Of a stretch of 64,000 nucleotides of DNA, positions 13,432 through 35,454 are shown piece by piece. The notes under the pieces were generated by a model, which ran no database searches, had not been told where the DNA came from, and saw nothing but the letters and a program-made list of their open reading frames with translations. Every line of letters begins with the position of its first letter. Position 1 is the stretch's first letter. The stretch spans positions 44,020,001 to 44,084,000 of the forward strand of contig OZ249436.1 in NCBI GenBank assembly GCA_965235115.1, read 5' to 3'. This DNA comes from Laetmonice hystrix. Lineage: Eukaryota. The position numbers were made by a program, and so were the translations under genes.

Positions 13432-14344
13432 CTAGGAACCGTCACAGAACTCAGATTCAAGTACAGATATCACGGTGCAGCTTGTTTTAGGAACCGTCAC
13501 AAAACACAGATTCAAGTACAGATATGACGGTGCAGCTTGTTGTAGGAACCGTCATAAAACACAGATTCAAGTACAGATATGACGGTGCAGCTTGTTTTAG
13601 GAACCGTCACAAAACACAGATTCAAGTACAGATATGACGGTGCAGCTTGTTTTAGGAACCGTCACAAAACACAGATTCAAGTACAGATATGACGGTGCAG
13701 CTTGTTTTAGGAACCGTCACAAAACACAAATTCAAGTACAGATATGACGGTGCAGCTTGTTTTAGGAACCGTCATAAAACACAGATTCAAGTACAGATAT
13801 GACGGTGCAGCTTGTTTTAGGAACCGTCACAAAACACAGATTCAAGTACAGATATGACGGTGCAGCTTGTTTTAGGAACCGTCACAAAACACAGATTCAA
13901 GTACAGATATGACGGTGCAGCTTGTTTTAGGATCCGTCATAAAACACAGATTAAAGTACAGATATGACGGTGCAGCTTGTTTTAGGAACCGTCACAAAAC
14001 ACAGATTCAAGTACAGATATGACGGTGCAGCTTGTTTTAGGATCCGTCATAAAACACAGATTAAAGTACAGATATGACGGTGCAGCTTGTTTTAGGAACC
14101 GTCACAAAACACAGATTCAAGTACAGATATGACGGTGCAGCTTGTTTTAGGATCCGTCATAAAACACAGATTAAAGTACAGATATGACGGTGCAGCTTGT
14201 TTTAGGAACCGTCACAAAACACAGATTCAAGTACAGATATGACGGTGCAGCTTGTTTTAGGAACCGTCACAAAACACAGATTCAAGTACAGATATGACAG
14301 TGCAGCTTGTTTTAGGAACCGTCACAAAACACAGATATGACGGT
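13432..14344. repeat. Minisatellite, 55-bp unit, ~16 copies
   Basis: TAGGAACCGTCACAAAACACAGATTCAAGTACAGATATGACGGTGCAGCTTGTTT. Confidence 0.95.
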
Positions 14345-15116
14345 CAGGTTGACAAAGGTCAATCTGCGCCGGAAAACCTTCATAGTCCACGAAAATTAAA
14401 CTACAGCAGTCAAAAACCGCACCAGTCTCAGTGGAGGATCCAGGATTTTGAATAATGGAATTCCGAATAATGCATCTTCTTTAAAAAAGGGGGAAAGGAA
14501 AATGTAAGGGGGGCCGGGCCCCTTAGGCCCCCCTGGATCACCCAGTGAGTCTCTTTCATCTGAGAGCTACTACTATTGGAATAAGAACTATTGCGTTGTT
14601 TTCTCTTGGTCAAAATGTAACTAGGCTTTAATCTGTAGTGATCCGGCAAGGTCAAAATGGATTTTAAATATGCGTGGATTAATAAAGCATAGAATAAGTT
14701 GAAAAGGTGTTTAAAGCTTCTGTCAGAAAAAGAAATGGAGATAAAACCGAATAAAAGGAGAACCTGGGTCGACTATTGATAAAATATTTGCTACGTCTAC
14801 GTCAATGTCATGGACGAGGAACGGTGAAGGTCAGCCGGTAAGGTCATGGACGTTATAACATGTTAACAGGCCCTATTTACATGACACACCATGACTCTGT
14901 CGAAAATATCCTAATATGGAAGTACAACATGTATTCATAACATGGTGTCAGACATCAAAGCCAAGACGCGCACCGTGACAGGTGAATCCTTGACGTGGCT
15001 TGAAACACCCCGCGCGCCCTCTTGCGGTGTCTCGGATCACTAACCCCAGGGGCCGGATGGTGGGACGGGCGGGGCTGAGGGTCACGGTGAACCGCCGTCA
15101 CCCCCGCCGCCTACAG

Positions 15117-15253
15117 AGGGTGGTTATAATCACCCCGGAACAGGTTACAATGTGGCAGCTGGTGTTCACTGTACCGTGGACCGGTCCCGGTGTGATGGAG
15201 GCTGCAGCCAGCCATCCCGACTGTACCGTGATCACTATGGACAGTGTACGCAG
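15117..15253 (+). CDS. Candidate orphan Cys/Gly-rich exon
   Basis: ctacag|AG...CAG|gtatcc; GGYNHPGTGYNVAAGVHCTVDRSRCDGGCSQPSRLYRDHYGQCTQ; partner exons not identified. Confidence 0.3.
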
Positions 15254-15318
15254 GTATCCACACCACGTGGTGCTGTAGACAGCCAGTGGATCCATTCATA
15301 CAGGAGGTTGGAGTTACT

Positions 15319-16067
15319 GGAGTCTGGAGATTGGCCCTGGCCTCTGGAGGAGCGATGTTAGTAGGTGAGTACCCGAGTCTGGAGATTGGCCCTGGCCTCT
15401 GGAGGAGCGATGTTTGGAGGTGATTACCGGAGTCTGGAGATTGGCCCTGGCCTCTGGAGGAGCGATGTTTGGAGGTGAGTCCCGGAGTCTGGAGATTGGC
15501 CCTGGCCTCTGGAGGAGCGATGTTAGTAGGTGAGTCCCGGAGTCTGGAGATTGGTCCTGGCCTCTGGAGGAGCGATGTTTGGAGGTAAGTACCCGAGTCT
15601 GGAGATTGGTCCTGGCCTCTGGAGGAGCGATGTTTGGAGGTGAGTACCGGAGTCTGGAGATTGGTCCTGGCCTCTGGAGGAGCGATGTTTGGAGGTGAGT
15701 ACCCGAGTCTGGAGATTGGTCCTGGCCTCTGGAGGAGCGATGTTTGGAGGTGAGTACCCGAGTCTGGAGATTGGCCCTGGTCTCTGAAGGAGCGATGTTT
15801 GGAGGTGAGTACCCGAGTCTGGAGATTGGCCCTGGTCTCTGGGGGAGCGATGTTTGGAGGTCAGTACCGGAGTCTGGAGATTGGCCCTGGCCTCTGGAGG
15901 AGCGATGTTTGGAGGTGAGTACCGGAGTCTGGAGATTGGCCCTGGCCTCTGGAGGAGCGATGTTTGGAGGTGAGTACCCGAGTCTGGAGATTGGCCCTGG
16001 CCTCTGGAGGAGCGATGTTTGGAGGTGAGTACCGGAGTCTGGAGATTGGCCCTGGCCTCTGGAGGAG
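15319..16067. repeat. Minisatellite, 55-bp unit
   Basis: GGAGATTGGCCCTGGCCTCTGGAGGAGCGATGTTTGGAGGTGAGTACCGGAGTCT. Confidence 0.95.
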
Positions 16068-17534
16068 TATCAGACTATCAGACGCTCTTAAAATCTGACA
16101 GGGGATTAAGCAGTGATTCCCACCATTTATTGAAAGGTCAGAAGAGGAAGGACTGCATGAGGTCAATGATTTGAAATGTTATATACTATGAAGAAGATTC
16201 GCGTTTTTATGGCGAATCTTTATTGGGAACACGAATCGGGAGATGTCAGCAATCACATTTTAGAGAGACTTTAAAAAACTGCACCAAATGGTACTTGTCC
16301 TCGTTTTTCTATTTGCCATGACTGTTTCATGCCTGGAAAACCAAATTTAATTTTCCATGACCTTTCATGTCCTGATGTTTCGGCAATCAGCAGCCTGGGT
16401 CAAACTACAGTGTGCCTTGTGAGCTATCGCACAAGCCTATAATGCCAGAGATGATCACGGAAGAATCAGATTCTGGGGCTAGAGTGGTTCCGTATAAAGG
16501 CGACTGGAGAGTTGAGAATATAACTAAAAATTGAAAATACCTTTAAAAAATGAAACTGGACTTAATGGCTGGTCCAAGTCCTATACCGTTCGAAGATCTG
16601 GCGTCTGGAAACACACGATAGCCCATTGAGAGTCAACTGATTTGGAACCTTGCCGCAGATTGAGCCCACTGACGGGGTACGGGTTCTATTGCTAGATCCC
16701 TTTAGAAGAGTTGTGTCCACCTATCGCCGAGTTACACCCTCACCTCTCCAGGTGGACACATAGCAACCGAGCCGAACTCTTCGTACTGTCAGGTTTTCAA
16801 CAGCGTCTGTTTCCAGACTACGACCGAACGCGGAGACCGGTGCCTCACAGTTCCCTACATTACTACAGTGGTGGTAATTGCTTTATATATCCCCCTCCAG
16901 TTCGAGGACCACAGAAAGGGTGTGCACATATACTTAACGTTATGATAGGATAAAAACAAAATTCCGCCGAAATTAAAAGTATTCAAGTACTACAGGTCTT
17001 AGGTAAAAATTAAATACAAATTTTGATACACATTTTACGTCTGTAAAATTTGTTTTAATGAACATAAACAGAAATTTTGAAAATCACACAGCAAATTTGT
17101 GGTCAGTGCCCTCTCCATATTGCAGTCACGTGTGCATGTCTTGAGTTCTTTGATATGCAAATTAGGGTGTTAGTCGCAAGGCCTATTGTAAGACGCTCTA
17201 TTGTTTTGTCTTCTGTTCTGCTACCCACTGACCCACAAAGATTATGTAAGTGGGGATTACCTGCATGAAGCAGTGAGCCCCACGAACCACCAGCAAGCAC
17301 CGCAACTACCAAGCTAGTTATACCTTGTCGTATATGGTGATGTCGGAAGCAAATTTTTGGTGCGGGGCGGGGGTGGGGGGCAACTAGGCCCTGTTTCAGG
17401 TAAATTTTAGGTTACAAGTGTGCGTGGCAGCGGTTAAATGGACAGAACTCAACCCTTTATAGGCCCGCTGAGACATGATTCTTGGGGGGGGGGGCAAAAC
17501 ATTTCCAGTTCTTTGGTGTTTGGGTGCGTGTGTA

Positions 17535-17607: not shown

Positions 17608-19002
17608 GTCCACAGATTGTTTTCTTTCAAAAACCGACTTGTGAGGACTCTGTGTAGCGCCCCCTGTCGTCCCTTTCGTGAACTAGGCCATGTCCACCAA
17701 TAGCGGCGTTTAGCGGATGTGTGAGTGTGTGGTAGCCGCGCCGAGTGTATGTGCCCCTTTTCGCAGGTCCTCTCTTTATCGGTAACAGTAAGAATATAGT
17801 TTCACTAAAATCCGTTAGGGGGCTGCGCGCTCCCCGCAGCGATGTTTCACGTTGAGTTTTATATATTTTGATGGTGACTCTGCCTGGAGAGTGTCAGCAG
17901 GTCCACGGAACGCGCGGTCAGGGTCAATCAGTCCTCGGAGGGTGCGCAAGGAGCCAGTACACTCAGGTTAGTCTCTAACTTGGTAAAATAGTATTTTAAC
18001 CCGTATTAGACCCTACTTGACAATGTTGGAATACAAACAGGACGGTTGTTAGATCTACTGTCTTATTATTAACATAACAATTAACCCGTGTAGCCAATTA
18101 AAACCCTTCTAGACAATCAATGAGTATCAAAATTCGAGAAGGGCCCGAGAACACGCCCTCCCACTATCCGCCATATTACATTTCATCATCATCAATCATC
18201 CCCCATCTACATTCAGGAAATGTGGAGAATTCCTAGACTATATCAAAGCGCCACTTAGACCCATTATAAAGTTACCATTATAATAATTGGGGATGGCGCC
18301 TGCATAACTGCGAACAAACTGGGAGCCTGACCCTATTAATGTTAATCTTTTTTGGTACCATTCATTGTCCTCACTTTGAAGGCCACATTTTTCGTAAATG
18401 TGTCCAGACCTTTTAGCCTGGCTTTCCGTTCAGTGGCGGATCTAGGGGCAAGGGTGTAGCCTTAGGGGGTTTCCGGGTTGCCTGGAAACCTCCTCCCCTC
18501 CCCCAAAAAGATAATTAATAGATAATTAAATAGATATAAATGATTGACTAATATTATGGTTGGACCCCCCCCCCCCCACTTTTAGTTGGACCCCCCCCCC
18601 ATCTCGATTCTGCCTACACCCCGGAGGGGGTGTCTGCGACGTCCGAACCCCGCCCCCCCCCTCAAATTTCCCAAATTTCATTTTTAACCAAAATATAACA
18701 ATCTCTAGGAGGTGTAGAGGATAATTTCATTTTCCTAAAACATGGCCAAAGTTGTCCTGGGTGGCCAAAGTAACCCCAGTTTACTTATTCCATGTTTTAA
18801 TTGGTTTGTCATTTGTAAAAATTATTTTTTATGCCTGTATTAAACTCGGATAACCTTGTGTGTCCTCCCTTTGTATAGGCCTAGGTTTATATAATTACTT
18901 AGTTTGTGTCCTCACTCCTAACTTACTCAAGTGACCCCGTTGCACTAGGTTGATTATACTTTAAAAATTTGCAGACATTTTCACTTATTTTACATTAGGA
19001 AC

Positions 19003-20935
19003 ATGCCACGGCAGAGCAGGAAACCACCGGAAGAAGTGGCAAAGCAGTATATTCGATCAAATAGTGACCCACCTTGGATATGTGAACAACACATCAGTGA
19101 TGAAAAAGGTCAGTTCAAGATAAATGTATCTGACAAGCAGGCAGTTACCATTTCTTAATGAGCCATGATAATGAAACTATAATATTTGTAGGGATGGGAG
19201 GTGTATGTTCAAACAAGGGGAGGGTGCTTTCACTTTCAGTAGTGTTACGTAACATCATTATGGCTATATTCTTAGTGGTAGCCACTGGGGAAAAAACAGC
19301 AGTTGGTAAAACTTTGAGTACTGGTCATGGATATCATTTTTATGGTTTTAAAATTGAAATGGTTTGCTTTTACAATTCGTTTCTGTTTGGGACTGTTCTA
19401 GTTATTTATAAGACTAGACTATCAAGGTTATTACAGTAAAACTGTTGGGCTCAAGTTTGTGATCCATGGCTTGCTAATGAATCCCCGAGAGGCAGTAGCC
19501 ACCTAACTTTGGTTGGACCAAACTCAGATGAGGACAAATTACATTTTTTACAATTCCTAATGTCAAGCAAACATTCCTTTACTGATATAACAAAGCACAC
19601 CATTATTTTATTTTTTACCATAATGTAGTCCATATATAGTGGAATATGTAATGTGCTTTGTATTTTTTTTTAAATTAAAATTGTATAGGGGCACCAGGTA
19701 CTGCTCTCACTGTCCTTTCATCTGGGCCAATTATTTAGCATTTTTGGCACCCCCTCTCCCCTTCTTAAAACCTACAGCTGGAAATTAGGGGGGTGGGGGG
19801 TGGGGCTCGTAAATGCTTATTCTTGTTAGATTTGACCATGTTATGTACCCTATATACCTTTCACAAATTTAGACAGTGCCCCAAGGTTTCGTTGCCCCTG
19901 GAACAAGTCAAGTTTTGGAATCGCCCCCCCCCCCTTCCAAAGCTGCAACACTGAGCACAAGGAACCGATTCTTCTCTTGTCTCCAGCCTTCAGGATCGGG
20001 TGCTGCACTACACTAGCAGAGCCAACAAATTTTCATAGGGGTGGAAATGCTGAGACCAGTAATCCCTTTGGGGTGGCCCGGACATTGGTAGCCCTAAAAT
20101 GTAAATGTTGTGTGGACCAGTCCGTGGAGTGGCAAGTTAGGTGGCCAGCAGGCTTGAGTTTAGGGTAGCCACGTAAATTGTTGAACAGCCCCTAAAAGCA
20201 CATGTACTGTTTCAGGACGAGGGGTTGTGTGTTGCGACGATATCTTGCCAGGGCAGTTTGTGGCAGAATATAAAGGTGAACTAGTAACAGCTGATGAAGC
20301 ATCTGCACGGGAAGAGGAACAGGACAGCGTGTTCCGTTTTTTCTTCACGTGGCAGAAGAAGGAACTTTGGTGAGATTCTGCGATGTTATCTTTAGTGAAA
20401 GTAGAAGGTAATTTCTGTGTCTTTAAACAAAGGTCATGAATGATAAACATGACTACACATAGCACTATATTTGACTTCCCACTGTAATTATATTGCCTGT
20501 GGCTATGACCTTGACAAAGACTTGTTTTTTTATGTTTCTAGTGTTGATGCTTCAGAGGAGCCTGTAGCAGGCCCCAGACTTGGCCGACTTGTCAATCATG
20601 GAGAAAAGTCAGAAAGAAACAGTAGAATGAAAGTTGTGGAGGTGGAATGCATACCAAGGCTTTGCTTGTTTAGTACTTGGTGAGTCCTGTTTGATTTTAG
20701 AAGCCACAGATATGAACAACGACTACCATAGAAGTTTTCAGAAACATGGATACCATGTGGCTCCTCATTTCTATTTGACAGCTTTATGGAACATGATTAT
20801 CTGTGTTTTTGTAAAAAAAAAAGAAAGATTTTGTCTCATGAAGTGTACTTTCCTGACAGTGACATCGGACCTGGCACAGAAATTATGTATGACTATGGGA
20901 TCAAAGAAGAAGATATGCCATGGAAGAAGGCAAAG
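19003..20935 (+). CDS. Exons 1-4: SET-domain lysine methyltransferase (PR-Set7/KMT5A-like)
   Basis: Spliced translation MPRQSRKPPEEVAKQYIRSNSDPPWICEQHISDEK-GRGVVCCDDILPGQFVAEYKGELV...KELCVDASEEP...RLGRLVNHG...LCLFSTCDIGPGTEIMYDYG...PW; hallmark GRGV, EYxGEL, RLVNH and YDYG motifs. Confidence 0.9.
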
Positions 20936-23900
20936 GTTAGTGCCTTTGTATATTCCAGAGTCTCATAAAAACTTTTCCTTTCAGTTCGCGCTTTATTAGA
21001 CAGATTTCTAGTAATCTCTTGCCTTGTGAAAACTGTGTTATTTAGGGCATATGCGTAGGAATAGGGGTCTACAACCCCTCCCCCCATATCAAAGGTGAGG
21101 GGGAGGGGCTGAAGTGTCGTTCCGCAACACCCTGCTCCTTAAATCCTCCTTGGTCTCCCAGGAAGGACTAGACCACCGCGGGCCTCTTCATTTCTGTCAG
21201 AATTTGATCTCCAGAAGCCGGGAGATCCTGTTTTGGGCCTTCAAAATTAAAAATTTTCCGGGGAGCCTTCTGGACCCCATGCTGAATATAAAGTCTGCAC
21301 CTTCGGTTCGGTGCTTGCAGGGCACCACATAGCCGGCACTCTTAGGCCCCCCTAACAAAAGCTTCATATGCGCCTATTGGTTGTGGGTGAAAAAGGAATT
21401 GTGTGTGTCCCCCCTTTGTGTCCTCATATTGTTGCAAACTTTAATCTGGTCAAGTGGCGGGTGTGTCCACACTTATTTCAGTTCTAGGTTATAATGTCCT
21501 CACTTTGGTACATTTTTGGTCTAAGTGTGTCCTCACTTTGTAGCAATGAATACTTTTGTTTTTCCTAAGACTTACAAAAAGGCTAAGATTTCATTAATAC
21601 GTAATGGCTCTACGGCATAGGCCTACGGCGTACGGCATACATTGGAAATGGCCTGATTAAAGTGGGACAGATTCCATATTAGACTGGGATTGTATGGCAC
21701 GACTAAAGAGTAGTGTAGGAAGGAAAAATATATTGGGGGGGGGGGGGGGGAGGGGCAGAAGTGAAGTCACAATGACTTGCGCCTATGCTTTTTCATTGAG
21801 CCATGCGGTCATTTTATAAATATTTGGGGGGGGGGGGGGTGCAGCCCCCTCTGCCCCCAGCTTCCTACGCCCCTGCTATATGGCGTATGGAATAGGAGTC
21901 GCTCCCTGTAACGATTTTCGCCGTAACCGTATGCTTTCCGTAAGGGGAACTCTAAATAATTAATAATCACTAATCACGGCTTCCCTGGGGTCTTCCCTGG
22001 CCTTTGCACGCTACAAAGGCTTACCATGCAAGGACCGTATAAATTTTATGGAATCATCCGTATGCTCTTTACGTACGCCGTATGCCGTGGCCGTAGAGCC
22101 GTAACGCATTTATTGAATCTCAGCTTAAGGCCTCTACAAGTTTTAATATGATAATTATTTTGTTCGTTTGCATTAGTGGCTTAATGTTGATCGTGTCCCT
22201 GATAGTAATTATTTATCAAGTCCAAGAAATTAAATGGCACAGATGGCTATCTCCAGTAGAAAAGTATTATAGGTTGTCTGAAGACTCAGGGGTACCGAAA
22301 TATGGCTGTCTCTTTTTAAATGTTATGTTGTTTTCACAATTATATGAAGATTTTAAAAACTTTGCAGATACATCAACCTATTGGTTTGTATAGATATAAG
22401 ATTTTTGCTTTACATAGGCCTATGACGAACGTTTCCAATCAAATTCATGGGTGTCCGAAATCGGGGAGGGCCCAAACAGGGCAGTTACCCCCCCCCCCCC
22501 CCCGAATGGATAGCATTGTTTACAACACCATAAAAGAAAAGCTTAGAACTACACCCTGCGTGTCCTTCTTTATCCATTCAATAACTATATTTCAAAGACG
22601 TATACCCATATTTTTCCTGTTTAAAATGCCCCCATTAAAAAGTATTACCCTCTACCCTACCCCCTTCGGGAAATACGAACTATGCCTCTCTCAGGAATAT
22701 GTTCTACGGACGCCCATGAACACAAGTTGCTGTTATGTTGCCTTGGAAATGTCATCAGCCACGAATTATATTTACCGGTATAATCTCGATAATGTTATCA
22801 ATTTTTTTTATTCAACAATCGACGTCCACTTTGCCAGCAACACTCTAAAAGATCCTTCTTTCATTGCATTTGTCCTGCTGGTCTTCGGGCAATTCTTTGG
22901 CCCACTACGATTTAACTACTGAAAGATCACTGATATTTTTGCGTTAATGCATCATTTCAACGCCATCCCGTATCCTTTTTCCCTGATTATTCTTTTATGT
23001 AAGAGATTATACCAATATAATAAATTTCCACTCATGTATTTCTGTTTAAATATTTTCAAGTCGTGAGAAGCCCATGATTCAGAGATGTTTACTTACAGTG
23101 TTTTTGTAAAATATATTGAGCAGGTACAGCGGAACAGTTTCGACAGTGGGGGGGGGGGGCTATATCAGTATAACGGAGGTGAAACTATTGGAGATTTTTT
23201 ATTTAGATTTTATTATCAATTTGGTTCTCAATATTCATTCCCACCTTTAACTATGGAAGTCTTGGTCGACAAGAAATCGGGTGGGCCAAAAAATATTGGA
23301 ACACTCTTTTTTTGACTATAACTTCTACAATTACTCCGATGTCATAATGTTTTGCACATATCATGTGATTATTTGGGGCCTGTGGTACAAATTTCAGAAA
23401 GTGTCTGAAAGTGAAGCATGGATATGTAGGTTCACATTTGCAACAGCATGATACCATCCCAACTCAGCATTTCATTATACCTTAATGGCCAATGAAACAG
23501 CTAAATGTAAAACATAGCAAACAAAATAGAAGTATTTGGTAGCCTGTGTTGAATATTCTTTATTCCGTCAAGTTTAAAACCGATTATTTCCGCACCGTCA
23601 CAGGTCCAAACCTCACGAATGGTGTCAGTGATGCCCTACTGGGTCCGGTTGCCACGACTACCGGCCCAGAAATTGTCGGTGATGACCTCCTTTGTCCCGT
23701 TGCCATGGCTTCCACCCTTCAAGTTCCCGATAATGTTCTAAGTCCCGTTGCTAGAGTTGCTACCCCTAAAGTTACCTGTGATGACCTCCTGGGTCCAGTT
23801 CCCAAGGTTACTGCCCCTCACGTTGCCGGTGATGACCTCCTAGGTCCCGTTGCCACGGCTACCACCCCTCAAGTTGCCGGTGATGACCTCTTGGGTTCAG

Positions 23901-26900
23901 TTGCCACGGCTACCACTCAAGTTGCCGGTGAGGACCTCTTGGGTCCAGTTGCCACGGCTACCACTCCTCAAGTTGCCGGTGATGACCTCCTAGTTTCCGT
24001 TGCCACGGCTACCACCCCTCAAGTTGCCGGCGTGGACCTCCTAGGTCCCGTTGCCACGGCTACCACCCCTCAAGTTGCCGGCGATGACCTCTTGGGTCCA
24101 GTTGCCACGGCTACCACTCCCCAAGTTGCCGGCGATGACCTCCTAGGTCCAGTTGCCACGGCTACCACTCCTCAAGTTGCCGGCGATGACCTCCTAGGTC
24201 CAGTTGACAGGGCTAGCGCCCCTCGAGTTGCCGGCGTGGACCTCCTAGGTCCCGTTGCCACGGCTACCACCTCTCAAGTTGCCGGCGATGACCTCCTAGG
24301 TCCCGTTGCCACGGCTACCACCCCTCAAGTTGCCGGCGATGACCTCCTAGGTCCAGTTGACAGGGCTAGCGCCCCTCAAGTTACCGGTGATGACCTCCTA
24401 GGTCCCGTTGCCACGGCTACCACCCCTCAAGTTGCCGGCGATGACCTCTTGGGTCCAGTTGCCACGGCTACCACTCCTCAAGTTGCCGGTGATGACCTCC
24501 TAGTTCCCGTTGCCACGGCTACCACCCCTCAAGTTGCCGGCGATGACCTCCTAGGTCCAGTTGACAGGGCTAGCGCCCCTCAAGTTACCGGTGATGACCT
24601 CCTGGGTCCCGTTGCCACGGCTACCACCACTCAAGTTGCTGGCGATGACCTCTTGGGTCCAGTTGCCACGGCTACCACTCCTCAAGTTGCCGGTGATGAC
24701 CTCCTAGGTCCCGTTGCCACGGCTACCACCCCTCAAGTTGCCGGCGATGACCTCCTAGGTCCAGTTGACAGGGCTAGCGCCCCTCAAGTTACCGGTGATG
24801 ACCTCCTGGGTCCCGTTGCCACGGCTACCACCACTCAAGTTGCTGGCGATGACCTCTTGGGTCCAGTTGCCACGGCTACCACCCCTCAAGTTGCCGGTGA
24901 TGACCTCCTGGGTCTAGTTACCACAACTTCTGTCCATCAAGTTGTCAGTGATGCCCTCCCGTGGTCCGTTGCCATGGCTACCACCCCTCCATTTGTCAGT
25001 GATGCCTTTCTGGGTCCTATCGCCATGGCTACTGCCCCTCAAGTTGATGAAGTCCAGCCTAGTACATCCGCTACCAGTGCTCTGCCAGACAACAGTAATG
25101 AGATGATGATCACTGATTCCCAAAGTCCGGGCCAATCTAGTACAGGAGGTACGAGAATAATAACCAAGATCAATGTTGTTTCCGTCCTCGCTTAGTTTCA
25201 ACTTTGGTGTCCTCACTTTGTTTCAAGCCTGGTGTGTGTTCTTAGCTTGCTTCAGCCTTGGCATATGTCTGTCCTCACTTTGCTCCAACCTTGGTGTATG
25301 TGTCCCCATTCTGCTCCAACCTTGCTGTATGTGTCCTCACTCTGCTCCAACCTTGGTGTATGTGTCCTCACTCTGCTCCAACCTTGGTATATGTGTCCTC
25401 ACTCTGCTCCAACCTTGGTGTATGTGTCCTCACTCTGCTCCAACCTTGGTATATGTGTCCTCACTCTGCTCCAACCTTGGTGTATGTGTCCTCACTATGT
25501 TTGAAGCTTGCCAGGTGTGACTGCACCATGTTTCGACCATGTGTCGTCACTTTGATATTCTCAACATTGGGGTCTGTTTCCTCAGGTTGTTTTAACCTTG
25601 ATGTGCGTTATCTTCACCTGTCTCCGACCCTATATTTAATTGTTCATCTTTTAGGTGCAGCCGCTACTGATGTCATCGACCACGCGTCATTTAGTGAAGA
25701 TGGTGAAGATGAAGATAGTATGGAGGACTATGTACCAGGCTCATCAAGCAGCGAATCAAGTTCTGACTATTCGGATGTCATACCCTTTCAGGGTCTGCCC
25801 TCTGCAAAAGGAAACCAGGAAGCTAAGTACAGAAAAGCCATTTCCAAGATGTGCTCAAGAGCCCTGGAAGCTCGACAAGCCCCACAAGCATCCACCAGTT
25901 CAGATAGTTTCATCAGCCCGTCTAGTGCCCTGGGAGCCCGACAAGCCCCACAAGCATCCACCAGTTCAGATAGTTTCATCAGCCCGTCTAGTGCCCTGGG
26001 AGCCCCACCAACCTCCGGTTCGGATGATGTCCTAGGATCACAAAGTGCCCTGGGGACATCACAAGCCAATGATGCAGTTTTGCATAACAGAAAAATAAGA
26101 GTCATGGTGGCAGACAATGAACAAGGAAGAAAATGGGACAAAATCTATTACTGTTTATATTGTCAGAAGCCACAGAAGAAATTGCCAAGACATATAACTA
26201 CTCAACATCCGGACGAGGTGAAAGTTGTGGAGTACTGCAATGAAAAGAACAGTCTAAGGAAATCACAGAAAATGTGTCTTCTTAGAAACCTAGGTAACCA
26301 CAAACATAACTGTGAAGTGCTGAGAAAGGGAGAAGGGATTTTGATAGTAACTCACAGACCAGTGAGGGCAACCCTACCAGACGAATACGGTCCATGTGAA
26401 ATTTGCTTTGCCTACATCCTCAGAAATGATCTCTGGAGGCACAGATGTCCGCTTAAGGATGAACAGGAAGAGGAACCAGTGAAAAAGAAACGCAGAGCAG
26501 TCAGTTGTAAACTCCTTCTTCCGCCCCCACCAGGTATCAGCGAAAATTTGCACACAATCACCCATTCCATGAGGGCCGACAACATATCCAGAATCACAAA
26601 AAGTGACAACCTCATCCTGGCCCTTGGAGAGAAGTTGTATCAAAAGGTTGGGCACAATAAATTTCAACATAATTACATCAGATGCAAGCTAAGAGAGATG
26701 GGACGTCTCCTTGCCCAATTACGTACTGATACTGGGAAGTCAAATTCAAAGCTCGAAGACTTCATTGAGCCTGACCAGTTTAGGGTTGTACTAGCTGCAG
26801 CAAGACGAGTCTGTGGATTCGAAAAGGAAGGTCAAACGTACAAAACGCCATCACTTGCATTGAAGTTAGGCCATAGTCTTCGAAAGTGTGCCAAGATCTG

Positions 26901-29335
26901 CCAAGGACAGTCAATAGAGTTGAATAACGAAGAAAAACAGAAAAAGGTGAAATCTTTTCTAAAACTGATGGATATAAACTGGACAGAGGAGATGTCAACT
27001 CAGGCACTGCGTACCTTGTATGAATTAAAAAGGAACAAGGTCAAACTTCTTCCTCTTGTTGAAGATGTCCACTTGTTGTCGGCGTATCTAAAGGAAACGG
27101 GAAAGAAAGCTGCTGCTTACTTAACAGCAAGCCAGAGTGAGGATCCAAAATATACTTCTCAATGGGACGTTCTTCGAGATGTTTTGTTGGTTCGACTCAT
27201 CCTCTTCAACAGGCGGCGACAAGGTGAGGTTTCACACATGTCTGTTGAGGACTACGCCAAGGTCCATCAGGCTGGTCATGAAGGCTTTGTGATGGAAAGT
27301 TTAACCACTCTGGAACAGAATCTCAGTCGCCACTTCTTTCGTGTTGAGATCCGCGGAAAGCGTGGAAACACTGTGCCGGTACTTCTCAACAAAGAGTGTA
27401 AAGAATGGCTGGATGTCTTAGTGGCTACCAGGGAAAAGGTTGGTATTGCTCCCGGAAATGACTACCTCTTTGCCAGATCACATTATGGATCTCTTGACCA
27501 TGTCAGAGGTTCTGACTGCTTAAGGGACATGAGCGAACAGTGTGGAGCAAGAGAGCCTCAGCTACTACGAACGACTAAACTACGCAAACAGATTGCGACA
27601 ATGAGTCAGATCTTAAACTTAAAAGATCACGAGCTTGACGTACTAGCCCGGTTCCTCGGCCACGATATCCGAGTACACAGGGAGTATTACCGCTTACCAG
27701 ACCAAACCCTTCAAGTGGCCAAAGTGACAAAACTTCTCTTGGCAATGGAAAAGGGAGGGCAAGGCCTACAGCTTGGACAGAGTCTAGATGACGTCAACGT
27801 AAACGTGGNNNNNNNNNNNNNNNNNNNNNNNNNNNNNNNNNNNNNNNNNNNNNNNNNNNNNNNNNNNNNNNNNNNNNNNNNNNNNNNNNNNNNNNNNNNN
27901 NNNNNNNNNNNNNNNNNNNNNNNNNNNNNNNNNNNNNNNNNNNNNNNNNNNNNNNNNNNNNNNNNNNNNNNNNNNNNNNNNNNNNNNNNNNNNNNNNNNN
28001 NAAACAAAATAGGGATTCCTTTACAGAAATTGATGCCAATTCTGGACAGTCGAGTGAAAGCGATGGGGACCAGGGAAGCCAACAGGACAGTTCTGCCAAC
28101 ACTGAAGCATCGAAACGTGTATCCCAAAGAAATATCGCAAGTCAACTGGAGATAACTCCGGGGAGTACCACAGCAAGTCAACAGAAGAACACCAAACAAC
28201 TTAAAGGTAGAAATCACTAATTTCGCCCCCCCCCCTGCATTTTCACTTCTGTTGATCGCAACTTTAAAATAGATTTATTTAAACAGGATTCTAATGCATC
28301 AGGGAGTAACTAATTTATTAGCATGATGTCAGGTGCTGGTGATCATAATCATTCCCACCACTGTCCCAGACCGTAAGAAATCTTCTCCACGGCCCCTTCA
28401 CCTGAAAGCCCTGGCTTGCTTTTGTGCGTCCTCACTTTGTAGGATGAGTGTAATGCCTATAGCCATGTCCTCAGTCTGTTGTGTGTGTCCTCACTTCGCG
28501 GTGTCGGTGTGGACTGTGTCCTCACTTTGTGCCATTGGTGTGTTGTGTGTCCTCGCTTTGTAAAGTGGGTTTAATACATAAACCCATGTTCTCAGTCACT
28601 CAGTGTCTTGTGTTTGTCCTCACTTCGTGTACTGGTTCGTAGTGTGTCCTCACTTTGTAGCATTGGTGTGGTGTGTGTCCTCACTTTGTAGCATTGGTGT
28701 GGAGTGTGTCCTCACTGTGTAGCATTGGTGTGGCGTGTGTCCTCACATTGTAGCATTGGTGTGGCGTGTGTCCTCACATTGTAGCATTGGTGTGGCGTGT
28801 GTCCTCACTTTGTATCATTGGTGCGGTGTGTCCTCGCTTTAATTGTAAGGTGTGTTTTATGCATAAACCCATGTCCTCAGTCACTCAGTTTCTTGTGCGT
28901 GTTCTCACTTTGTAGCATTGGTATGGAGTGTGTCCTCACTTTGTAGCATTGGTGTGGTGTGTGTCCTCGCTTTGTAGCATTGGTGTGGTGTGTGTCCTCG
29001 CTTTGTATCATTGGTGTGGTACTTAATTATTTTAAATATGAAGTTTTTGTTTATTCTGAGTTTAAATTAAAGTAAAAATTCATGAATGACTTCGTTACAT
29101 TGTTATAGAGCCAGCAGAAACATCTGTTCGCCGGCCCCAGAAGAAAAGAGGCTGGAACGAGACTGAGGTCAACACTGTAATGAGATACTTCAGTACCGAC
29201 ATCGCGCTGGGGAACCTGCCGGGAAAATCACAAATAGAAGCTATGCTTGCTGCAGAACAGCCATTGGAACACCGGTCGTGGAGGAATGTCAAAGATTTTA
29301 TTAGAAATCGCATTGTTAGTCAGAAGAAACTTTAA
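19003..29335 (+). CDS. Spliced SET domain - repeat linker - Zn finger - tyrosine recombinase - Myb/SANT-like fusion protein (~1550 aa or more)
   Basis: Exons 19003-19108, 20216-20369, 20542-20679, 20860-20935, 23398-23425 (tentative), 23604-25148, 25655-27808+ (N gap), ~28013-28206, 28333-28372 (tentative), 29109-29335. All visible junctions are GT-AG and phase-compatible; the junction inside the gap cannot be checked. Confidence 0.7.
21579..22126. mobile_element. MITE nested in intron 4 of the YR-element gene
   Basis: ~55-bp imperfect TIRs (AAGGCTAAGATTTCATTAATACG...CTCTACGGC / GCCGTAGAG...ATTGAATCTCAGCTT). Confidence 0.7.
23604..25148 (+). CDS. Repeat-rich linker exon (17-aa GDDLLGPVATATTPQVA units, 51-bp period)
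   Basis: Acceptor cacag|GT at 23604, donor GGAG|gtacga at 25148/25149; 1545 bp with no stop; phase 1 matches the acceptor of the YR exon at 25655. Confidence 0.7.
25205..25500 (+). repeat. Intronic 31-bp array carrying the element terminal motif
   Basis: TGTATGTGTCCTCACTCTGCTCCAACCTTGG. Confidence 0.9.
25655..27808 (+). CDS. Tyrosine recombinase exon with N-terminal Zn fingers
   Basis: YCLYCQKPQKKLPRHITTQH (C2H2) and CEIC...HRC. Catalytic-type motifs LFNRRRQGE (27211), RGKRG (27352), TTKLRK (~27577), FLGHDIRVHREYY (27658-27690). About 718 codons without a stop up to the N gap. Confidence 0.9.
27809..28001. other. Assembly gap (N run) inside the YR gene
   Basis: Ns. Confidence 1.
28425..29000 (+). 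repeat. Intronic ~31-bp array carrying the element terminal motif
   Basis: GTGTGTCCTCACTTTGTAGCATTGGTGTGGT. Confidence 0.9.
29109..29335 (+). CDS. Terminal exon: Myb/SANT-like helix-turn-helix module
   Basis: ttatag|AG CCA...; PAETSVRRPQKKRGWNETEVNTVMRYFSTDIALGNLPGKSQIEAMLAAEQPLEHRSWRNVKDFIRNRIVSQKKL*, W...W spacing typical of Myb-like folds. Domain identity is inferred. Confidence 0.7.
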
Positions 29336-30023
29336 ATGTGTAAAGATCCGGGTTCCGTTCGTGTCTGGTTACTTAGCATTGTTATGAGCACAATTTTTAA
29401 GACACATTAAAAGGATTTCAGTGAAAATCACAAATAGAAGCTATGCTTGCTGCAGAACAGCCATTGGAACACCGGTCGTGGAGGAATGTCAAAGATTTTA
29501 TTAGAAATCGCATTGTTAGTCAAAAGAAACTTTAAATGTGTAAAGATCCGGGTTCCGTTCGTGTCTGGTTACTTAGCGTTGTTATGAGCACAATTTTTAA
29601 GACACATTAAAAGGATTTCAGTGAAAATCACAAATAGAAGCTATGCTTGCTGCAGAACAGCCATTGGAACACCGGTCGTGGAGGAATGTCAAAGATTTTA
29701 TTAGAAATCGCCTTGTTAGTCAAAAGAAACTTTAAATGTGTAAAGATCCGGGTTCCGTTCGTGTCTGGTTACTTAGCGTTGTTATGAGCACAATTTTTAA
29801 GACACATTAAAAGGATTTCAGTGAAAATCACAAATAGAAGCTATGCTTGCTGCAGAACAGCCATTGGAACACCGGTCGTGGAGGAATGTCAAAGATTTTA
29901 TTAGAAATCGCATTGTTAGTCAGAAGAAACTTTAAAAGTGTAAAGATCCGGGTTCTGTTCGTGTCTGGTTACTTAGCGCTGTTATGAGCACAATTTTTAA
30001 GACACATTAAAAGGATTTCAGTG
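29224..30023 (+). repeat. Four tandem 200-bp copies of the last-exon end plus 3' UTR
   Basis: AAAATCACAAATAGAAGC recurs at 29224, 29424, 29624 and 29824. Confidence 0.95.
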
Positions 30024-30259
30024 TATTTTCGCAACTTCCTGTTTTTCTTGATGCAGTTTTAGGGGTAGCTCTAGGTACCCCACCTGACTGTAGTGATTAG
30101 GCCCCTATATATCCCTCCTGACTGTAGTGCTAGAAGTATCTCTTTTTCAAAGCAGCGGACGTTTATTTGACTCTCAAGTAGTACTGAAACTGAAGAATCG
30201 GGGAACTTCTCGCAATTTTTATCATTACGGGTTGATGCATGCCCCTGGGTTCTTAGTAT

Positions 30260-30532
30260 GGTGCGTGTCCTCACTTCGTAGCATTGGTGTGCGGTGTGTC
30301 CTCAGTTTGTAGGAAGTTTAATGCCTATACCCATGTCCTCGGTTTGTTGTGTGTGTCCTCACTTTGGAGCATTGGTGTGGTGTGTTTCCTCACTGTGTAG
30401 CATTGGTGCGATGTGTGTCCTCACTTTGTAGCATTGGTGTGATGTGTCCTCGCTTTGTAGGATGGTTTTAATGCATAAAGCAATGTCCTCAGTAAGTGAG
30501 TGTAGCATTGGTGTGGTGTGTCCTCGCTTTGT
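30260..30532 (+). repeat. Third array of the element terminal motif
   Basis: Repeated GTGTCCTC(A/G)CTTTGTAG...ATTGGTGTG. Confidence 0.85.
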
Positions 30533-31070
30533 AAAGATAATGAACAATTCGTCCAATTCCGCTTTGTTTTAAAAATTGTTTGTATTTTATTGGATATTTA
30601 AATAGAGTATTTGCATTATATCTGTATCTTAGATAAAATTGTATTCGTTGTTGAACCCAACCTTTAATTTAACGGGTATCTAGATATACATGTATTTCTG
30701 GCATTATTGTCCCTGGTGAAGAGTAAAGATCGCGTGTAGTTTACCTACACAAAGTTAAGATGCCTTATTTCACAATTTTAAGGAGTTTTCCCAGCACTAC
30801 AAGCAGAGTATTGTATGAAGGAATAACCTGAAGGCGTCAGGGGGACAAGTTGCCCATCATTGCTTTTTCCAACCCTTCTACTGTCAAGAGTAGACGAAAT
30901 AGGAAACGTGTTTAAAATAACAGTAGGTGAAGTTGAAGTAGGCCAAATCCGAGTAGATGAGGTCGGGTTTTATGTCTGAGATTTAGGTGGTCGCACTGAG
31001 TTGCTCTAATTAATCGTGAGTAATCTCCTAAGATAGTATTCGATCGAGACTGAACCAAAGTGGTCTTGAT

Positions 31071-31730
31071 CAGGCGCGGATCCAGGGGGTGCATTGGGTG
31101 CACGTGCACCCCCCTTGAGTCCCCATTTTTATATATAGGCCTATATTAATCAAACCCCTCCCGTTCCAAGTGACCCGCATCTGGCAAACCGGCACCAAAA
31201 CCCACTGACCCGCGAGGACAGCCATAGGACCCACCTGAATGATAAATCTAGGGCGTTTTAGGCCTAGATTTATCATTTAGGTGGAGCCTATCCTCTTTTT
31301 TGCCACTTTGTGTCGTTTGTTGAGGATAGTCTGCGGCTTGATCACACGTGCATTAGTAAATTTAGCTCAGATTACATATGCGCCATCAGGTGGCCTATAG
31401 ATCTATAGCCACGCATATCTGATAGATGGCGATTGTGCCCCCCCCCCCCCCTTTTTTTGCAGACTGACTTTTTAACGAATTGCTAAAAAAGCTAGGCCTA
31501 TTTTCAGCTGACTCTAAGACCTTGCAGCCTATGTTGTTCCCAGATGCCAGGAAAACGCATATTTGGCACTTTATTTTTAGGCTTATATTATTATTGAAAC
31601 TTGGGACCTATATGTAAGTAGTCGTAAAATAGTGATAAGAACTGATGCACCGTCCTATACTTTGGGGACCTCACAAGTATCTTTGATGGTGCACCCCCCC
31701 CCCCCTACAGAGCAACTGGATCTGCCCCTG
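31071..31730. mobile_element. G-run MITE nested in the 3' part of the YR element
   Basis: CAGGCGCGGATCCAG / CTGGATCTGCCCCTG imperfect TIR (12/15). Confidence 0.5.
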
Positions 31731-32055
31731 TTGATGATGGGTTGGTTTCATCAGTTGGATAATTTTTAAGGCGGACTGCAGTAGGCCTAGTTTCATTTAG
31801 AATAAATTGCATACGCAGTCCTGCTTTTTACATGCAGTATACGAAATGTCCTCGTACTACCCCATCCATTGGGTATGGATGTGTCCTTACTTTGGTGACC
31901 CAATTAGCTTTCAATACACATGTGGTCCCACCTTTGATAGATTTTGTCCACACACAAAAAAATGTTAGAACTTAACGAAATTAGAGTTTAAGCCTCATTA
32001 GGTTAATTTAATATACCATGCAAAATAATGGCCTAATATCTTTAGAAATAAAAGA

Positions 32056-32412: not shown

Positions 32413-32532
32413 GGGCCCGGTTCACAAACAAAGTCAAGTCAATTTTAATTAACTTGAAACCAATCAGATTTAAGTAAAATTGACTTCAAGTCAATTAAAA
32501 TTGACTTGACTTTGATTGTGAACCGGGCCCTG
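32413..32532. mobile_element. MITE family A copy 2 (opposite orientation)
   Basis: Matches the reverse complement of 12891-13013. Confidence 0.85.
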
Positions 32533-33770
32533 GAGGCGCCAGCTAGGGGACATCGGCCTGGTGTTATGAGAAGTGGCGGTCGGTGCTCGGCACACACACC
32601 GCCCCAGTTCCCGGCCAGTCTCCGGGGTAGATTTGATATAGGGTCACTATTATCTAGATAATAGTGACCGGGGAGGTTATTATTATCTAGATAATACCTA
32701 CTGGGGGTAGGTATTAGATAGGGGGTAGGTATTAGATATGACACCGGCGCTAAACGATATGTCAATAGAATTGGTCTGATTTATTAAACGTATTTTTGGG
32801 ACAGTAGGATAAGCAACCTGTGTTTTAAAGTGGTTGTCTCACGAATTTCAAGTCATACGTAGCGTTTCCCAAATAATATGTCTGCATTGGGGGTCTCCAA
32901 TATGATCCAAAGCCCCGCTACCTTTCGATGTGAACTTTGCGGGTATTATGTAAAATACATTCAAAAAGTCGCGAAATCTTATTTCCGTCACTGAAAATGA
33001 CCTACTTCCGAAAATGGCTTCCGAGACCTCGGTAGTTGTTTTTTTTTATATTCGTATGTACACTGCTATGCAAATTATTTGTACTAGCGAAAATAGATTT
33101 CGAATCTACACCACAACAACACAACGTTCAAACGATTCAAACAAAAGTTTACATGGGGGCCTTTCTGTACTCGCCGTGTATGACATTGGAAGCTATTCCT
33201 GTTCTTCTCAAAAAACAATGACGCACTCCCTACAGGTTAGGATGGCCTTGCCCTGGCACAAAATCAGATAGAAACATGAGTGTGCAGAAAGTGTAAACAT
33301 GTGGTGAGACTTGGCAAGCAAACCCGTCCAGTCCCAGACCCAAAACAAAAACTAATGTTGCGGTTTTCCCTCTAACCATGGTGAAACTTATGTCTCTCTC
33401 CTTCTGGCAAAGATTAGGCTATACATTTCAAGATCCTCCTCCCAACTTTGTGAAGGGTTTGTGGGTGGAGTGGGGGGGGGGGGGGTGTCCTTTTGTCATT
33501 ACACAAGGCGTGGTAGCATTTTTCTGGAGACTTCATTAGGCGTTCAAAAAGAGGGACGTCGATTTATGACATAGGCCTACTAGTTACCATGGGGACGGTC
33601 ACGGCCCGGCCGATATAGGAACCGACGTCGGCAGATGAATCATTTTTTTATTCTTTTAGTTGTAAAATGAAATTTTAGTTAGTATAACGTTAACGTATAT
33701 AATTCTCGACCCTGGTAAAGGCATTTGTGTTCTGTTTAAGGTTCTTGGATAAATGTGCATAGATCCATAC

Positions 33771-34480: not shown

Positions 34481-34836
34481 ACTGACAATCTGTTATAATG
34501 TTTGTAATAATGTCTGTAATAATCTGTAATAATGTCTGTAATAATGTCTGCAATAATCTGTAATAATGTCTGTAATAATCTGTAATAATGTCTGTAATAA
34601 TCTGTAATAATGTCTGTGATAATGTCTGTAATAATGTCTGTAATAATGTTTGTAATAATGTCTGTAATAATCTGTAATAATGTCTGTAATAATCTGTAAT
34701 AATGTCTGTAATAATGTCTGTAATAATGTCTGTATAATGTCTGTAATAATGTCTGTAATAATGTCTGTAATAATCTGTAATAATGTCTGTGATAATCTGT
34801 AATAATGTCTGTGATAATCTGTAATAATGTCTGTGA
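34481..34836. repeat. 10-12-bp (TGTAATAATGTC/TGTAATAATC) array
   Basis: Direct reading. Confidence 0.95.
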
Positions 34837-35273
34837 TGCGAATAAACAAAAATAAATAATGATCACTTGGATGAGATTGGGATGTTCTGCTTGGTTGCAA
34901 TTGACGCAATTAATGCAACATTAACAAAATACCTCCAGGAAAGAAGCCAACAAGGCCAAACAGTTTCTACCAACATGAGTTCCTGAACACCAGTACTATA
35001 CCGTATAGAGGAGAAAACACCAGCATGCCAGTCATCTTGATTACCAAAATTCTTACGATAATATGGAGCGGATGAAAGGCATACTTTTGCCCAATACCTA
35101 GGTGTCTGAGAAGACAGGTGCATGTAGCATTCCCGTTGCCCTACGGAGGCGTCAGATAGCAAACCTCTACAGGAATGCAAGCTAAACGCGTTCAGTGCCA
35201 GATTTCTACTGAACATTGCGAATTCCCAGAAGGATCCTACGGAGCCCTGTTGGGGACATGAAGAAAGGAAATT

Positions 35274-35410
35274 CGTTTCAGAGAATTTTTTGGTGGTAAT
35301 CTCGTAATAACTTAGTAATAACTTAGTGACGTCATTAAGTCGTAATAATGAGTTACTGACGTCATTAAGTCGTTATTACGAGATCACCACAAAACGTTTT
35401 CTCTAAAACG
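35274..35410. mobile_element. MITE
   Basis: ~38-bp imperfect TIR CGTTTCAGAGAA...GGTAATCTCGTAATAAC / GTTATTACGAGATCACC...TCTCTAAAACG. Confidence 0.7.
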
Positions 35411-35454
35411 AATGATTTATCGGCCTTGCTTACATTTCAAATTGTGCACTTTTC

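What the first reader, a model, noticed from the sequence alone, without database searches (positions are those of the whole stretch)
19003..25655. SET domain is spliced in frame to the recombinase: a candidate chromatin-writing integrase
Seen: exon phases run 1,2,2,0 through the SET exons. A 28-nt exon (23398-23425) gives phase 1 into the linker exon, and the linker donor (25148) matches the YR acceptor (25655). The SET motifs GRGV, EYKGEL, RLVNH and YDYG are retained. Established: this motif set resembles PR-Set7/KMT5A-type (H4K20) methyltransferases. Inference: the fused enzyme could methylate nucleosomes at its own termini or target sites, aiding silencing evasion or synapsis. The ORF track splits this into unrelated ORFs, so automated annotation would miss the fusion.
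Basis: partly seen in the sequence, partly recalled or inferred. Interest (0 to 1): 0.8.

Follow-up and report, generated by a model that had tools for sequence, protein, structure and literature searches.

The report
SET methyltransferase fused to transposon recombinase

Summary
Four canonical GT/AG exons (19003-20935, phases 1,2,2,0) splice into a complete 158-aa SET domain. A 51-nt tandem-repeat exon and a large downstream exon follow in frame.

The SET type is KMT5A/SET8: the family profile hits it in the PDB at 6e-39. Pfam finds no family on the downstream exon, but its AlphaFold model (pLDDT 86) matches only tyrosine recombinases (XerH 6e-6).

The fusion is not an artefact:
- In a relative (L001) the second half of SET, a repeat linker, zinc fingers and the recombinase form one uninterrupted ORF.
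- RefSeq models in fish, sea cucumber and jellyfish carry SET plus recombinase.
- Intron positions match the window.

A phase-0 acceptor at 23573 joins exon 4 directly and gives 1,401 open codons.

The gene extends beyond the finding, to a conserved homeodomain-like C-terminal exon (about 29106-29335).

Two sea-cucumber copies on different chromosomes are 98.8% identical with sharp ends, so the family is mobile.

A strand-specific motif, GTCC[T/C]CA, forms arrays in the non-coding parts of three elements.

Methyltransferase activity and any chromatin role remain untested. I found no paper describing this fusion.

The parts
18365..18922 (+). 5' cluster of GTCCTC(A)-type motif sites, upstream of the start codon
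   Evidence: Sites at 18365, 18860 and 18907, all on the + strand.
19003..19108 (+). Exon 1: start codon and the N-flank of SET (MPRQSRK...DEKG). Donor AAG|gtcagt, phase 1.
   Evidence: The intron position and phase (in the Gly of GRG) are conserved in L001 and in A. japonicus.
20216..20369 (+). Exon 2: the GRGV and EYKGEL part of SET. Phase-2 donor.
   Evidence: The intron before C-[IV]-DA is conserved in L001 and A. japonicus.
20542..20679 (+). Exon 3: the CVDAS...RLGRLVNH...PRLCLF part of SET.
20860..20935 (+). Exon 4: EIMYDYG...PWKKAK, the end of SET. Donor AAG|gttagt, phase 0. Read-through stops after 10 codons.
21405..21541 (+). Motif cluster in intron 4
23398..23425 (+). Not supported and not required.
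   Evidence: 127 equivalent phase-rescuing candidates in the intron.
23573..25148 (+). Linker exon. It encodes about 525 aa, mostly a 17-aa unit (QVAGDDLLGPVATATTP) repeated about 28 times. The donor after 25148 is phase 1.
   Evidence: Repeat linkers occupy the same position in 27 of 45 SET-recombinase proteins.
25184..25555 (+). 31-nt repeat array carrying the GTCCTCAC motif, in the intron between the linker and recombinase exons
25655..27808 (+). Recombinase exon, which runs into the N gap. It encodes an acidic/Ser-rich stretch, two zinc fingers (C26152-H26208 and C26395-C26448), the core-binding domain and the catalytic domain. Catalytic residues: R 27211-27219, K 27358, R 27583, H 27661, Y 27688.
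27809..28001 (.). Assembly gap (N). It hides the end of the recombinase exon and its donor. Not filled.
28426..29051 (+). 31-nt repeat arrays (core TGTGTCCTCACTTTGTAGCATTGGTGTGG) in the 3' intron
29106..29335 (+). Last exon: a conserved C-terminal three-helix, homeodomain-like domain (RGW...LPGK...RSWRNVKDFIRNRI) and the stop codon. The exact acceptor (29106 or 29108) is undetermined.
29223..30023 (+). 200-nt tandem repeat, 4 copies at 98% identity, duplicating the last 113 nt of the CDS plus the 3' flank
   Evidence: A 193-nt repeat of 5.6 copies lies just after the gene end in sea-cucumber copy L006.
30265..30532 (+). 3' motif array downstream of the gene. The last isolated match is at 31881.

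Best explanation
Window 18.4-31.9 kb holds one copy of a Crypton-like (tyrosine-recombinase, no reverse transcriptase) mobile element.

Its single multi-exon gene (19003 to about 29335, + strand) encodes one long protein, in this order:
- a KMT5A/SET8-type SET domain;
- a long tandem-repeat linker;
- an acidic/Ser-rich stretch;
- two zinc fingers;
- a tyrosine recombinase (core-binding plus catalytic domain);
- a C-terminal homeodomain-like domain.

Shown here: the exon structure, the domain identities, the physical fusion in relatives, the mobility of a close architectural relative, and strand-specific GTCC[T/C]CA arrays in the element's non-coding parts.

Inferred, from what is known of Cryptons and tyrosine recombinases:
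- The recombinase excises and integrates the element, probably through a circular intermediate.
- The zinc fingers and/or the C-terminal domain dock the protein on the motif arrays.
- The SET domain, held on a flexible linker, methylates a lysine on nearby nucleosomes at the element, its excised form or the target. H4K20 is the guess, by analogy with KMT5A.

The biological pay-off is not known. Candidates are recruiting H4K20me readers for repair or replication, or self-limiting compaction.
For: Gene model:
- Canonical splice sites and phases.
- 1,401 codons without a stop.
- The spliced SET is complete.

SET type: the family profile hits KMT5A/SETD8 at 6e-39 (136 bits), against about 85 bits for the next human family, MLL. 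Catalytic motifs are retained in the window and invariant in the family.

Recombinase:
- AF2 model with pLDDT 86.
- The 50 Foldseek PDB matches shown are tyrosine recombinases apart from two phage regulators: XerH 6e-6, XerA, XerD, IntI, Cre, lambda Int.
- R, K, R, H and Y are conserved with XerD-like spacing.

Fusion:
- L001 has the SET C-half, repeat linker, zinc fingers and recombinase in one ORF.
- 21 of the 98 first hits and 27 of 138 further representatives carry SET N-terminal to the recombinase.
- All full-length cluster members in cichlids and sea cucumber have both domains.
- Intron positions are shared with L001 and with the A. japonicus RefSeq model.

Mobility:
- A. japonicus copies on two chromosomes are 98.8% identical over 9 kb, with unrelated flanks.
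- Members at 90% identity or more lie on at least four chromosomes.
- The family has 14,054 representative clusters.

Cis motif:
- 38 of 38 matches are on the + strand and lie within 18365-31895; chance expectation is 0.18.
- The same core forms arrays in L001 and in both subterminal regions of the sea-cucumber element.
Against: - There is no transcript evidence for this window. The exon 4 to linker junction is ambiguous (23573, 23604 plus an extra exon, or neither).
- The N gap hides the end of the recombinase exon.
- The element's ends in the window are not defined, because only one copy is available.
- Pfam does not recognise the recombinase: no DUF3504, and Phage_integrase only in 4 of 38 members, below threshold.
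- The first His of the canonical catalytic set is Thr in this family.
- Most fish members have ND instead of the NH cofactor motif, so activity is not guaranteed across the family.
- Relatives L002-L004 show no SET within reach, so SET may be an optional module.
- The codon-position test on the linker was inconclusive.
Confidence: 0.75

Rival explanations
1. There are two transcription units in this copy. One is a short SET-only protein that ends at the stop 30 nt into intron 4. The other is a separately initiated recombinase mRNA. The colinearity is only adjacency.
For: - Read-through after 20935 stops after 10 codons, so a 168-aa SET-only product is possible.
- Prokaryote-style gene calls in relatives start the recombinase ORF at an internal Met (P0001).
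- A 127-aa 'KMT5A-like, partial' member exists.
Against: - An in-frame canonical acceptor exists at 23573.
- L001 has one ORF across both domains.
- RefSeq models in several phyla join them at matching intron positions.
- The repeat linker is a conserved part of the fused proteins.
Confidence: 0.12
2. The locus is a domesticated, immobile host gene derived from such an element, not a transposon copy.
For: - There is only one copy in 64 kb.
- All visible exons are intact.
- The gene has many introns.
- The element's termini are not identifiable in the window.
Against: - Close architectural relatives are dispersed, near-identical and sharply bounded.
- The window keeps the element-specific motif arrays and the 3' tandem repeats seen in the mobile sea-cucumber copies.
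- Several diverged lineages coexist in one assembly.
Confidence: 0.1
3. The copy is a decaying relic, and the apparent open frame through the linker is only a by-product of a stop-free tandem unit.
For: - A 51-nt unit without stops stays open however often it is repeated.
- Distinct variants fall 16/18/19 across the three codon positions.
- The window is full of minisatellites that give long spurious ORFs.
Against: - Indels in the array are multiples of 3.
- The non-repeat ends of the exon are also open and meet splice sites in the right phase.
- The SET, recombinase and C-terminal exons have no stops or frameshifts.
- Linkers of this kind are translated parts of annotated relatives.
Confidence: 0.1

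Closest known systems
Crypton DNA transposons (Goodwin 2003; Kojima & Jurka 2011, PMC3212892)
   Same: - Eukaryotic element encoding a tyrosine recombinase without reverse transcriptase.
- Intron-containing gene.
- Found in chordates, echinoderms, hemichordates, molluscs and cnidarians.
- Extra domains differ between Crypton groups.
   Different: - No DUF3504 or CryptonA-type similarity in Pfam scans.
- The paper holds no occurrence of 'methyltransferase' and says animal Cryptons have no C-terminal domain.
- This family adds a SET domain, a repeat linker, two zinc fingers and a C-terminal homeodomain-like domain.
- The unit is about 12 kb, with subterminal motif arrays.
KMT5A / PR-Set7 / SET8 (H4K20 monomethyltransferase)
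   Same: - It is by far the best PDB match of the family's SET profile (6e-39), aligned from the N-flank to YDYG.
- The window keeps GxG, EY.G, RL.NH and YDYG.
   Different: - No KMT5A N-terminal region.
- The C-flank after YDYG is shorter.
- Most fish members have ND instead of NH.
- The substrate is unknown.
SETMAR / Metnase (primate SET-mariner transposase fusion); comparison from my own knowledge
   Same: A SET domain spliced in frame to a transposon's DNA-breaking enzyme.
   Different: - SETMAR is a single-copy domesticated host gene with a DDE transposase and a different SET subtype.
- Here the fusion sits in the mobile element itself, with a tyrosine recombinase, and is spread over several phyla.
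DIRS1-type tyrosine-recombinase retrotransposons with a methyltransferase-like domain; chromodomain integrases of chromoviruses; comparison from my own knowledge
   Same: Mobile-element recombinase or integrase combined with a methylation or chromatin module.
   Different: - DIRS elements carry RT/RNase H, and their methyltransferase is DNA-methylase-like, not SET.
- Chromodomains read marks rather than write them.
- No other long ORF was listed in window 17-30 kb, and three of its shorter ORFs plus two elsewhere in the window had no Pfam match; no six-frame RT scan was run.

Membership tests
Tyrosine recombinase superfamily | Two-domain fold (core-binding plus catalytic) | tested here: met
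   AF2 model with pLDDT 86. Nearly all of the Foldseek PDB hits shown are tyrosine recombinases, aligned over about 400 columns, best 6.4e-6.
Tyrosine recombinase superfamily | Catalytic residues R-K-H-R-H/W-Y | tested here: inconclusive
   R373, K420, R495, H521 and Y530 are conserved (90-100%) with XerD-like spacing. The first His position is Thr492. The residue assignment rests on spacing and motif, not on a structural superposition I could inspect.
Tyrosine recombinase superfamily | Pfam Phage_integrase above the gathering score | tested here: not met
   No hit for the window. Only 4 of 38 relatives hit, best E 3.3e-4. The PDB sequence profile found only zinc fingers.
Crypton superfamily | Recombinase-encoding element without reverse transcriptase | tested here: met
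   No other long ORF was listed in window 17-30 kb, and three of its shorter ORFs had no Pfam match. A six-frame RT scan of the whole element was not run, so an RT split across frames is not strictly excluded. The sea-cucumber unit holds one annotated gene.
Crypton superfamily (CryptonA) | Recombinase similar to DUF3504 (E<=8e-12 per PMC3212892) | tested here: not met
   No DUF3504 hit at E<=1 in any of 38 members.
Crypton superfamily | Placement among Repbase/Dfam Crypton groups (A, F, I, S, V...) | not testable with these tools
   No Repbase or Dfam library is available. CryptonV is named only in classification tables.
KMT5A-type SET domain | Closest sequence relative among solved SET domains, over the full catalytic domain | tested here: met
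   KMT5A/SETD8 at 136 bits. The next matches are an unnamed SET-domain protein (4ldg, 97 bits) and MLL (85 bits). The window's spliced SET hits the family HMM at 1.7e-51.
KMT5A-type SET domain | Cofactor and catalytic motifs (GxG, Y of EY.G, NH, YDY) | tested here: met
   The window has GRGV, AEYKGEL, RLVNH and MYDYG. The role of each residue is from my own knowledge of SET enzymes.
KMT5A-type SET domain | H4K20 monomethylation activity | not testable with these tools
   Needs an enzyme assay.
Transposable element | Dispersed near-identical copies with discrete ends | tested here: inconclusive
   Met for the A. japonicus relative: 98.8% identity, unrelated flanks, two chromosomes. It cannot be tested for the window's own genome.

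The most novel reading that the evidence does not exclude
A metazoan-wide superfamily of tyrosine-recombinase transposons carries its own histone H4K20-type methyltransferase on a flexible tether. The protein docks on strand-specific GTCC[T/C]CA arrays and writes a histone mark on the element, its excised circle or the target. The mark recruits H4K20me readers (replication licensing or 53BP1-type repair factors). That would make it a transposon that writes chromatin as part of its own transposition cycle. The swap of SET for BRCT domains in oyster relatives would point to the same DNA-damage or replication interface.
Probability: 0.3. Interest if true: 0.85.

Novelty: new variant of a known kind. 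Interest (0 to 1): 0.62.

Why it matters
Transposons are known to read chromatin (chromodomain integrases) and to be silenced by it. A mobile element that encodes a histone-lysine methyltransferase as part of its recombinase would be a different relation with host chromatin.

The family is large: 14,054 clusters at 50% identity. It reaches from jellyfish to teleosts and appears in public annotations only as 'uncharacterized protein'.

It also explains many 'KMT5A-like' or 'SET domain-containing' gene models in fish and invertebrate genomes as transposon genes. That matters for gene-family counts.

The anatomy makes the idea directly testable: a separable SET domain, a separable DNA-binding domain and a defined candidate binding motif.

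Tried and rejected
- Pfam on every exon piece: nothing on the recombinase, the linker or the C-terminal exon.
- PDB sequence profile of the recombinase region: only Sgf11-like or C2H2 zinc-finger hits, so the recombinase call rests on the fold.
- DNA of the closest relative, P0001 (64% identity), and of P0046 and P0019 could not be fetched because the sample was too large. P0060 and P0029 were not on record.
- Codon-position test on the 51-nt repeat: inconclusive.
- blastn of the window element against L001-L004: only coding similarity and (TG)n.
- Search for the sea-cucumber terminal palindrome GGTTCCTTGC/GCAAGGAACC in the window: no convincing match, so the window element's ends stay undefined.
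- SET presence mapped on the recombinase tree: scattered across the tree (31 changes). Absence labels are unreliable because many rows are partial ORF calls, so I draw no single-origin conclusion.
- Literature: no paper combines a SET domain with a tyrosine-recombinase element, or KMT5A with a transposon.
- Host species was not identified. I ran no further search on it.
Full report
**1. What is in the sequence**

The window is eukaryotic, rich in minisatellites, and has two N runs (1135-1340 and 27809-28001).

- Each has a pyrimidine-rich AG acceptor and a GT(A/G)AG-type donor. The phases are 1,2,2,0.
- Spliced, they give 158 aa with GRGV, EYKGEL, RLVNH and YDYG.
- That peptide aligns end to end with the N-terminal module of database proteins: 45% identity to Apostichopus japonicus P0029 at E 9e-36, and family HMM 1.7e-51.

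**2. Linker and junctions**

A 51-nt tandem repeat (about 28 copies, 23628-25046) lies in a frame that is open from 23543 to 25195. The other two frames hold 17 and 54 stops.

- That exon is not distinguishable from chance. The intron holds 127 open AG...GT segments of the right length class, and the proposed one has a poor pyrimidine tract.
- A simpler solution exists. A phase-0 acceptor at exon start 23573 joins 20935 directly.
- With it, exons 1-4, 23573-25148 and 25655-27807 form 4,203 nt (1,401 codons) without a stop.

The open frame of the repeat is weak evidence on its own. The codon-position test was inconclusive, although array indels are multiples of three.

**3. The downstream exon is a tyrosine recombinase**

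Pfam finds nothing. A 38-sequence profile hits only zinc fingers in the PDB.

An AlphaFold model built on that alignment is confident (pLDDT 86). Nearly all of its Foldseek matches are tyrosine recombinases covering both domains: XerH 6.4e-6, XerA, XerD, IntI, Cre, lambda Int and Tn1549 Int.

Conserved residues, with window coordinates:
- R373 (27217), K420 (27358), R495 (27583), H521 (27661), Y530 (27688).
- Their spacing matches XerD-type enzymes.
- The first canonical His is Thr in this family.
- Two zinc fingers precede the recombinase (26152-26208 and 26395-26448).

**4. The gene goes further than the finding**

Beyond the N gap, an exon at about 29106-29335 encodes a 75-aa domain ending in a stop.
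- It is homologous to the C-termini of the same database proteins.
- It lies downstream of the recombinase exon in all the loci where it was searched for (L001-L005).
- It is conserved in 88 proteins.
- Its model (pLDDT 88) is a three-helix bundle. The top structural matches are all DNA-bound homeodomains (TM 0.6-0.8), though the E-values are not significant.
- Its last helix (VKDFIRNR) recalls the homeodomain recognition helix. This is my own reading.

The junction between the recombinase exon and this exon is hidden by the gap.

**5. Is the fusion real?**

Yes, for the family.
- In L001 (52% identical recombinase), the second half of SET, a 93-nt tandem-repeat linker, the zinc fingers and the recombinase are one uninterrupted ORF.
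- Of the first 98 homologues, 21 contain SET N-terminal to the recombinase. They include NCBI models from carp, grass carp, sea bream, cichlids, pipefish, sea cucumber and a jellyfish.
- Of 138 further representatives, 27 do as well.
- Every full-length member of the cichlid and sea-cucumber clusters has both domains.
- The introns E1|E2 (phase 1, in the Gly of GRG) and E2|E3 (phase 2, before [IV]DA) are shared with L001 and with the A. japonicus RefSeq model. That model also has introns after the SET end, before the acidic stretch and before the C-terminal domain, as in the window.
- A tandem-repeat linker is a recurrent feature: 27 of 45 proteins, median linker 232 aa.

Not all relatives show SET. 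L002-L004 have none within reach, and oyster relatives have BRCT domains instead.

**6. SET type**

The family's SET profile hits KMT5A/SETD8 at 6e-39 (136 bits) over the whole catalytic domain. The next human family reaches about 85 bits.

The catalytic Tyr residues and the cofactor Asn are invariant. Most fish members have ND where the window and sea cucumber have NH.

**7. Is it mobile?**

- The recombinase profile finds 14,054 clusters at 50% identity.
- In A. japonicus, members at 90% identity or more lie on at least four chromosomes.
- Two fetched copies (L005 and L006) are 98.8% identical over 9 kb and about 92% through 3' repeats, with unrelated flanks. That defines a unit of about 12.1 kb. 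One copy sits inside a NACHT gene.
- The window has a single copy, so its own ends and mobility cannot be tested.

**8. A cis motif**

- GTGTCCTCACTTTGT (up to 2 mismatches) occurs 38 times in the window. All matches are on the + strand and all lie between 18365 and 31895, in five clusters in non-coding parts. The chance expectation is 0.18.
- L001 has 16 GTCCTC(A/G)YTTGTTTAG units in 31-37-nt repeats downstream of its gene, again on the + strand only.
- The sea-cucumber element has GTCCCCA sites, + strand only, in its 5' subterminal region (5 sites) and in a 3' 24-nt repeat (12 sites).

I infer that these are docking sites for one of the element's DNA-binding domains.

**9. Mechanism, with basis**

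- Shown: domain content, fusion, motif arrays, and mobility of relatives.
- Inferred from tyrosine-recombinase and Crypton biology: excision and integration by site-specific recombination, probably through a circle.
- Speculative: the tethered SET domain methylates H4K20, or another lysine, near the element or its target.

**10. Novelty**

I found no paper linking a SET domain to a tyrosine-recombinase element. The Crypton survey holds no occurrence of 'methyltransferase' and states that animal Cryptons lack a C-terminal domain.

Repbase and Dfam could not be consulted. The proteins are public but unnamed.

I rate it a new variant of a known kind.

Noticed in passing
window 18365-31895; L001:19930-21959; L005:9631-10081 and 19112-19558: A strand-specific GTCC[T/C]CA motif forms arrays confined to the non-coding parts of three SET-recombinase elements from different hosts. 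They are candidate docking sites for the element's protein.
   Followed up: partly
window 29223-30023; L006:18147-19222: A tandem repeat of about 200 nt lies at the very 3' end of the gene. In the window it has 4 copies and includes the last 113 nt of CDS and the stop. Sea-cucumber copy L006 has 5.6 copies of 193 nt, whereas copy L005 has about 1.4.
   Followed up: partly
L005:9404-21503; L006:9394 to about 22800: The sea-cucumber element starts with TTTTT plus a palindrome (GGTTCCTTGC, spacer, GCAAGGAACC). In L005 it ends at ...AAAGTTAA. Inside its 399-nt 3' repeat, AAAGTTAA is followed by TTTTCAG, which resembles the junction a circle would make. A lone GCAAGGAACC lies 0.5-0.65 kb beyond the end in both loci, in unrelated sequence. 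This is unexplained.
   Followed up: partly
P0026, P0094, P0095 (oysters): Relatives of the same recombinase carry tandem BRCT domains at the N-terminus instead of SET, so the N-terminal module appears exchangeable.
   Followed up: no
Alignment A2 (fish SET-recombinase proteins): Most fish members have RLVND instead of the RL(I/V)NH cofactor motif that the window and sea cucumber keep. This may mean altered or lost activity in that branch.
   Followed up: no
window 17351, 19778, 21726, 21818, 33463, 33778: Short repeats with long G runs (AAATATTTGGGGGGGGGGGGGG...) occur both inside the introns and outside the element. They probably belong to an unrelated interspersed repeat.
   Followed up: no
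window 9749-10375, 14000-16164, 34493-35818, 37167-38400, 45799-46798, 50830-51507, 52324-53431: Many minisatellite arrays give long spurious ORFs. The genome is unusually rich in tandem repeats, which weakens any 'long ORF' argument in this window.
   Followed up: no
window 31224-31291, 32413-32530, 32642-32706: Near-perfect palindromes with arms of 29, 52 and about 13 nt lie downstream of the element's last motif array. They could be MITE-like insertions or terminal structures.
   Followed up: no
ENA sample ERZ26222911 (P0001, P0019, P0046): One assembly holds at least three diverged lineages of the family (64%, 45% and 41% identical to the window). It also holds two places with an identical 696-aa recombinase ORF whose upstream ORFs differ in length (497 vs 315 aa), consistent with a variable repeat linker.
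   Followed up: no
window 41444-42136 (- strand): A 230-aa ORF with no Pfam match. It may be an exon of a host gene and could help identify the host.
   Followed up: no
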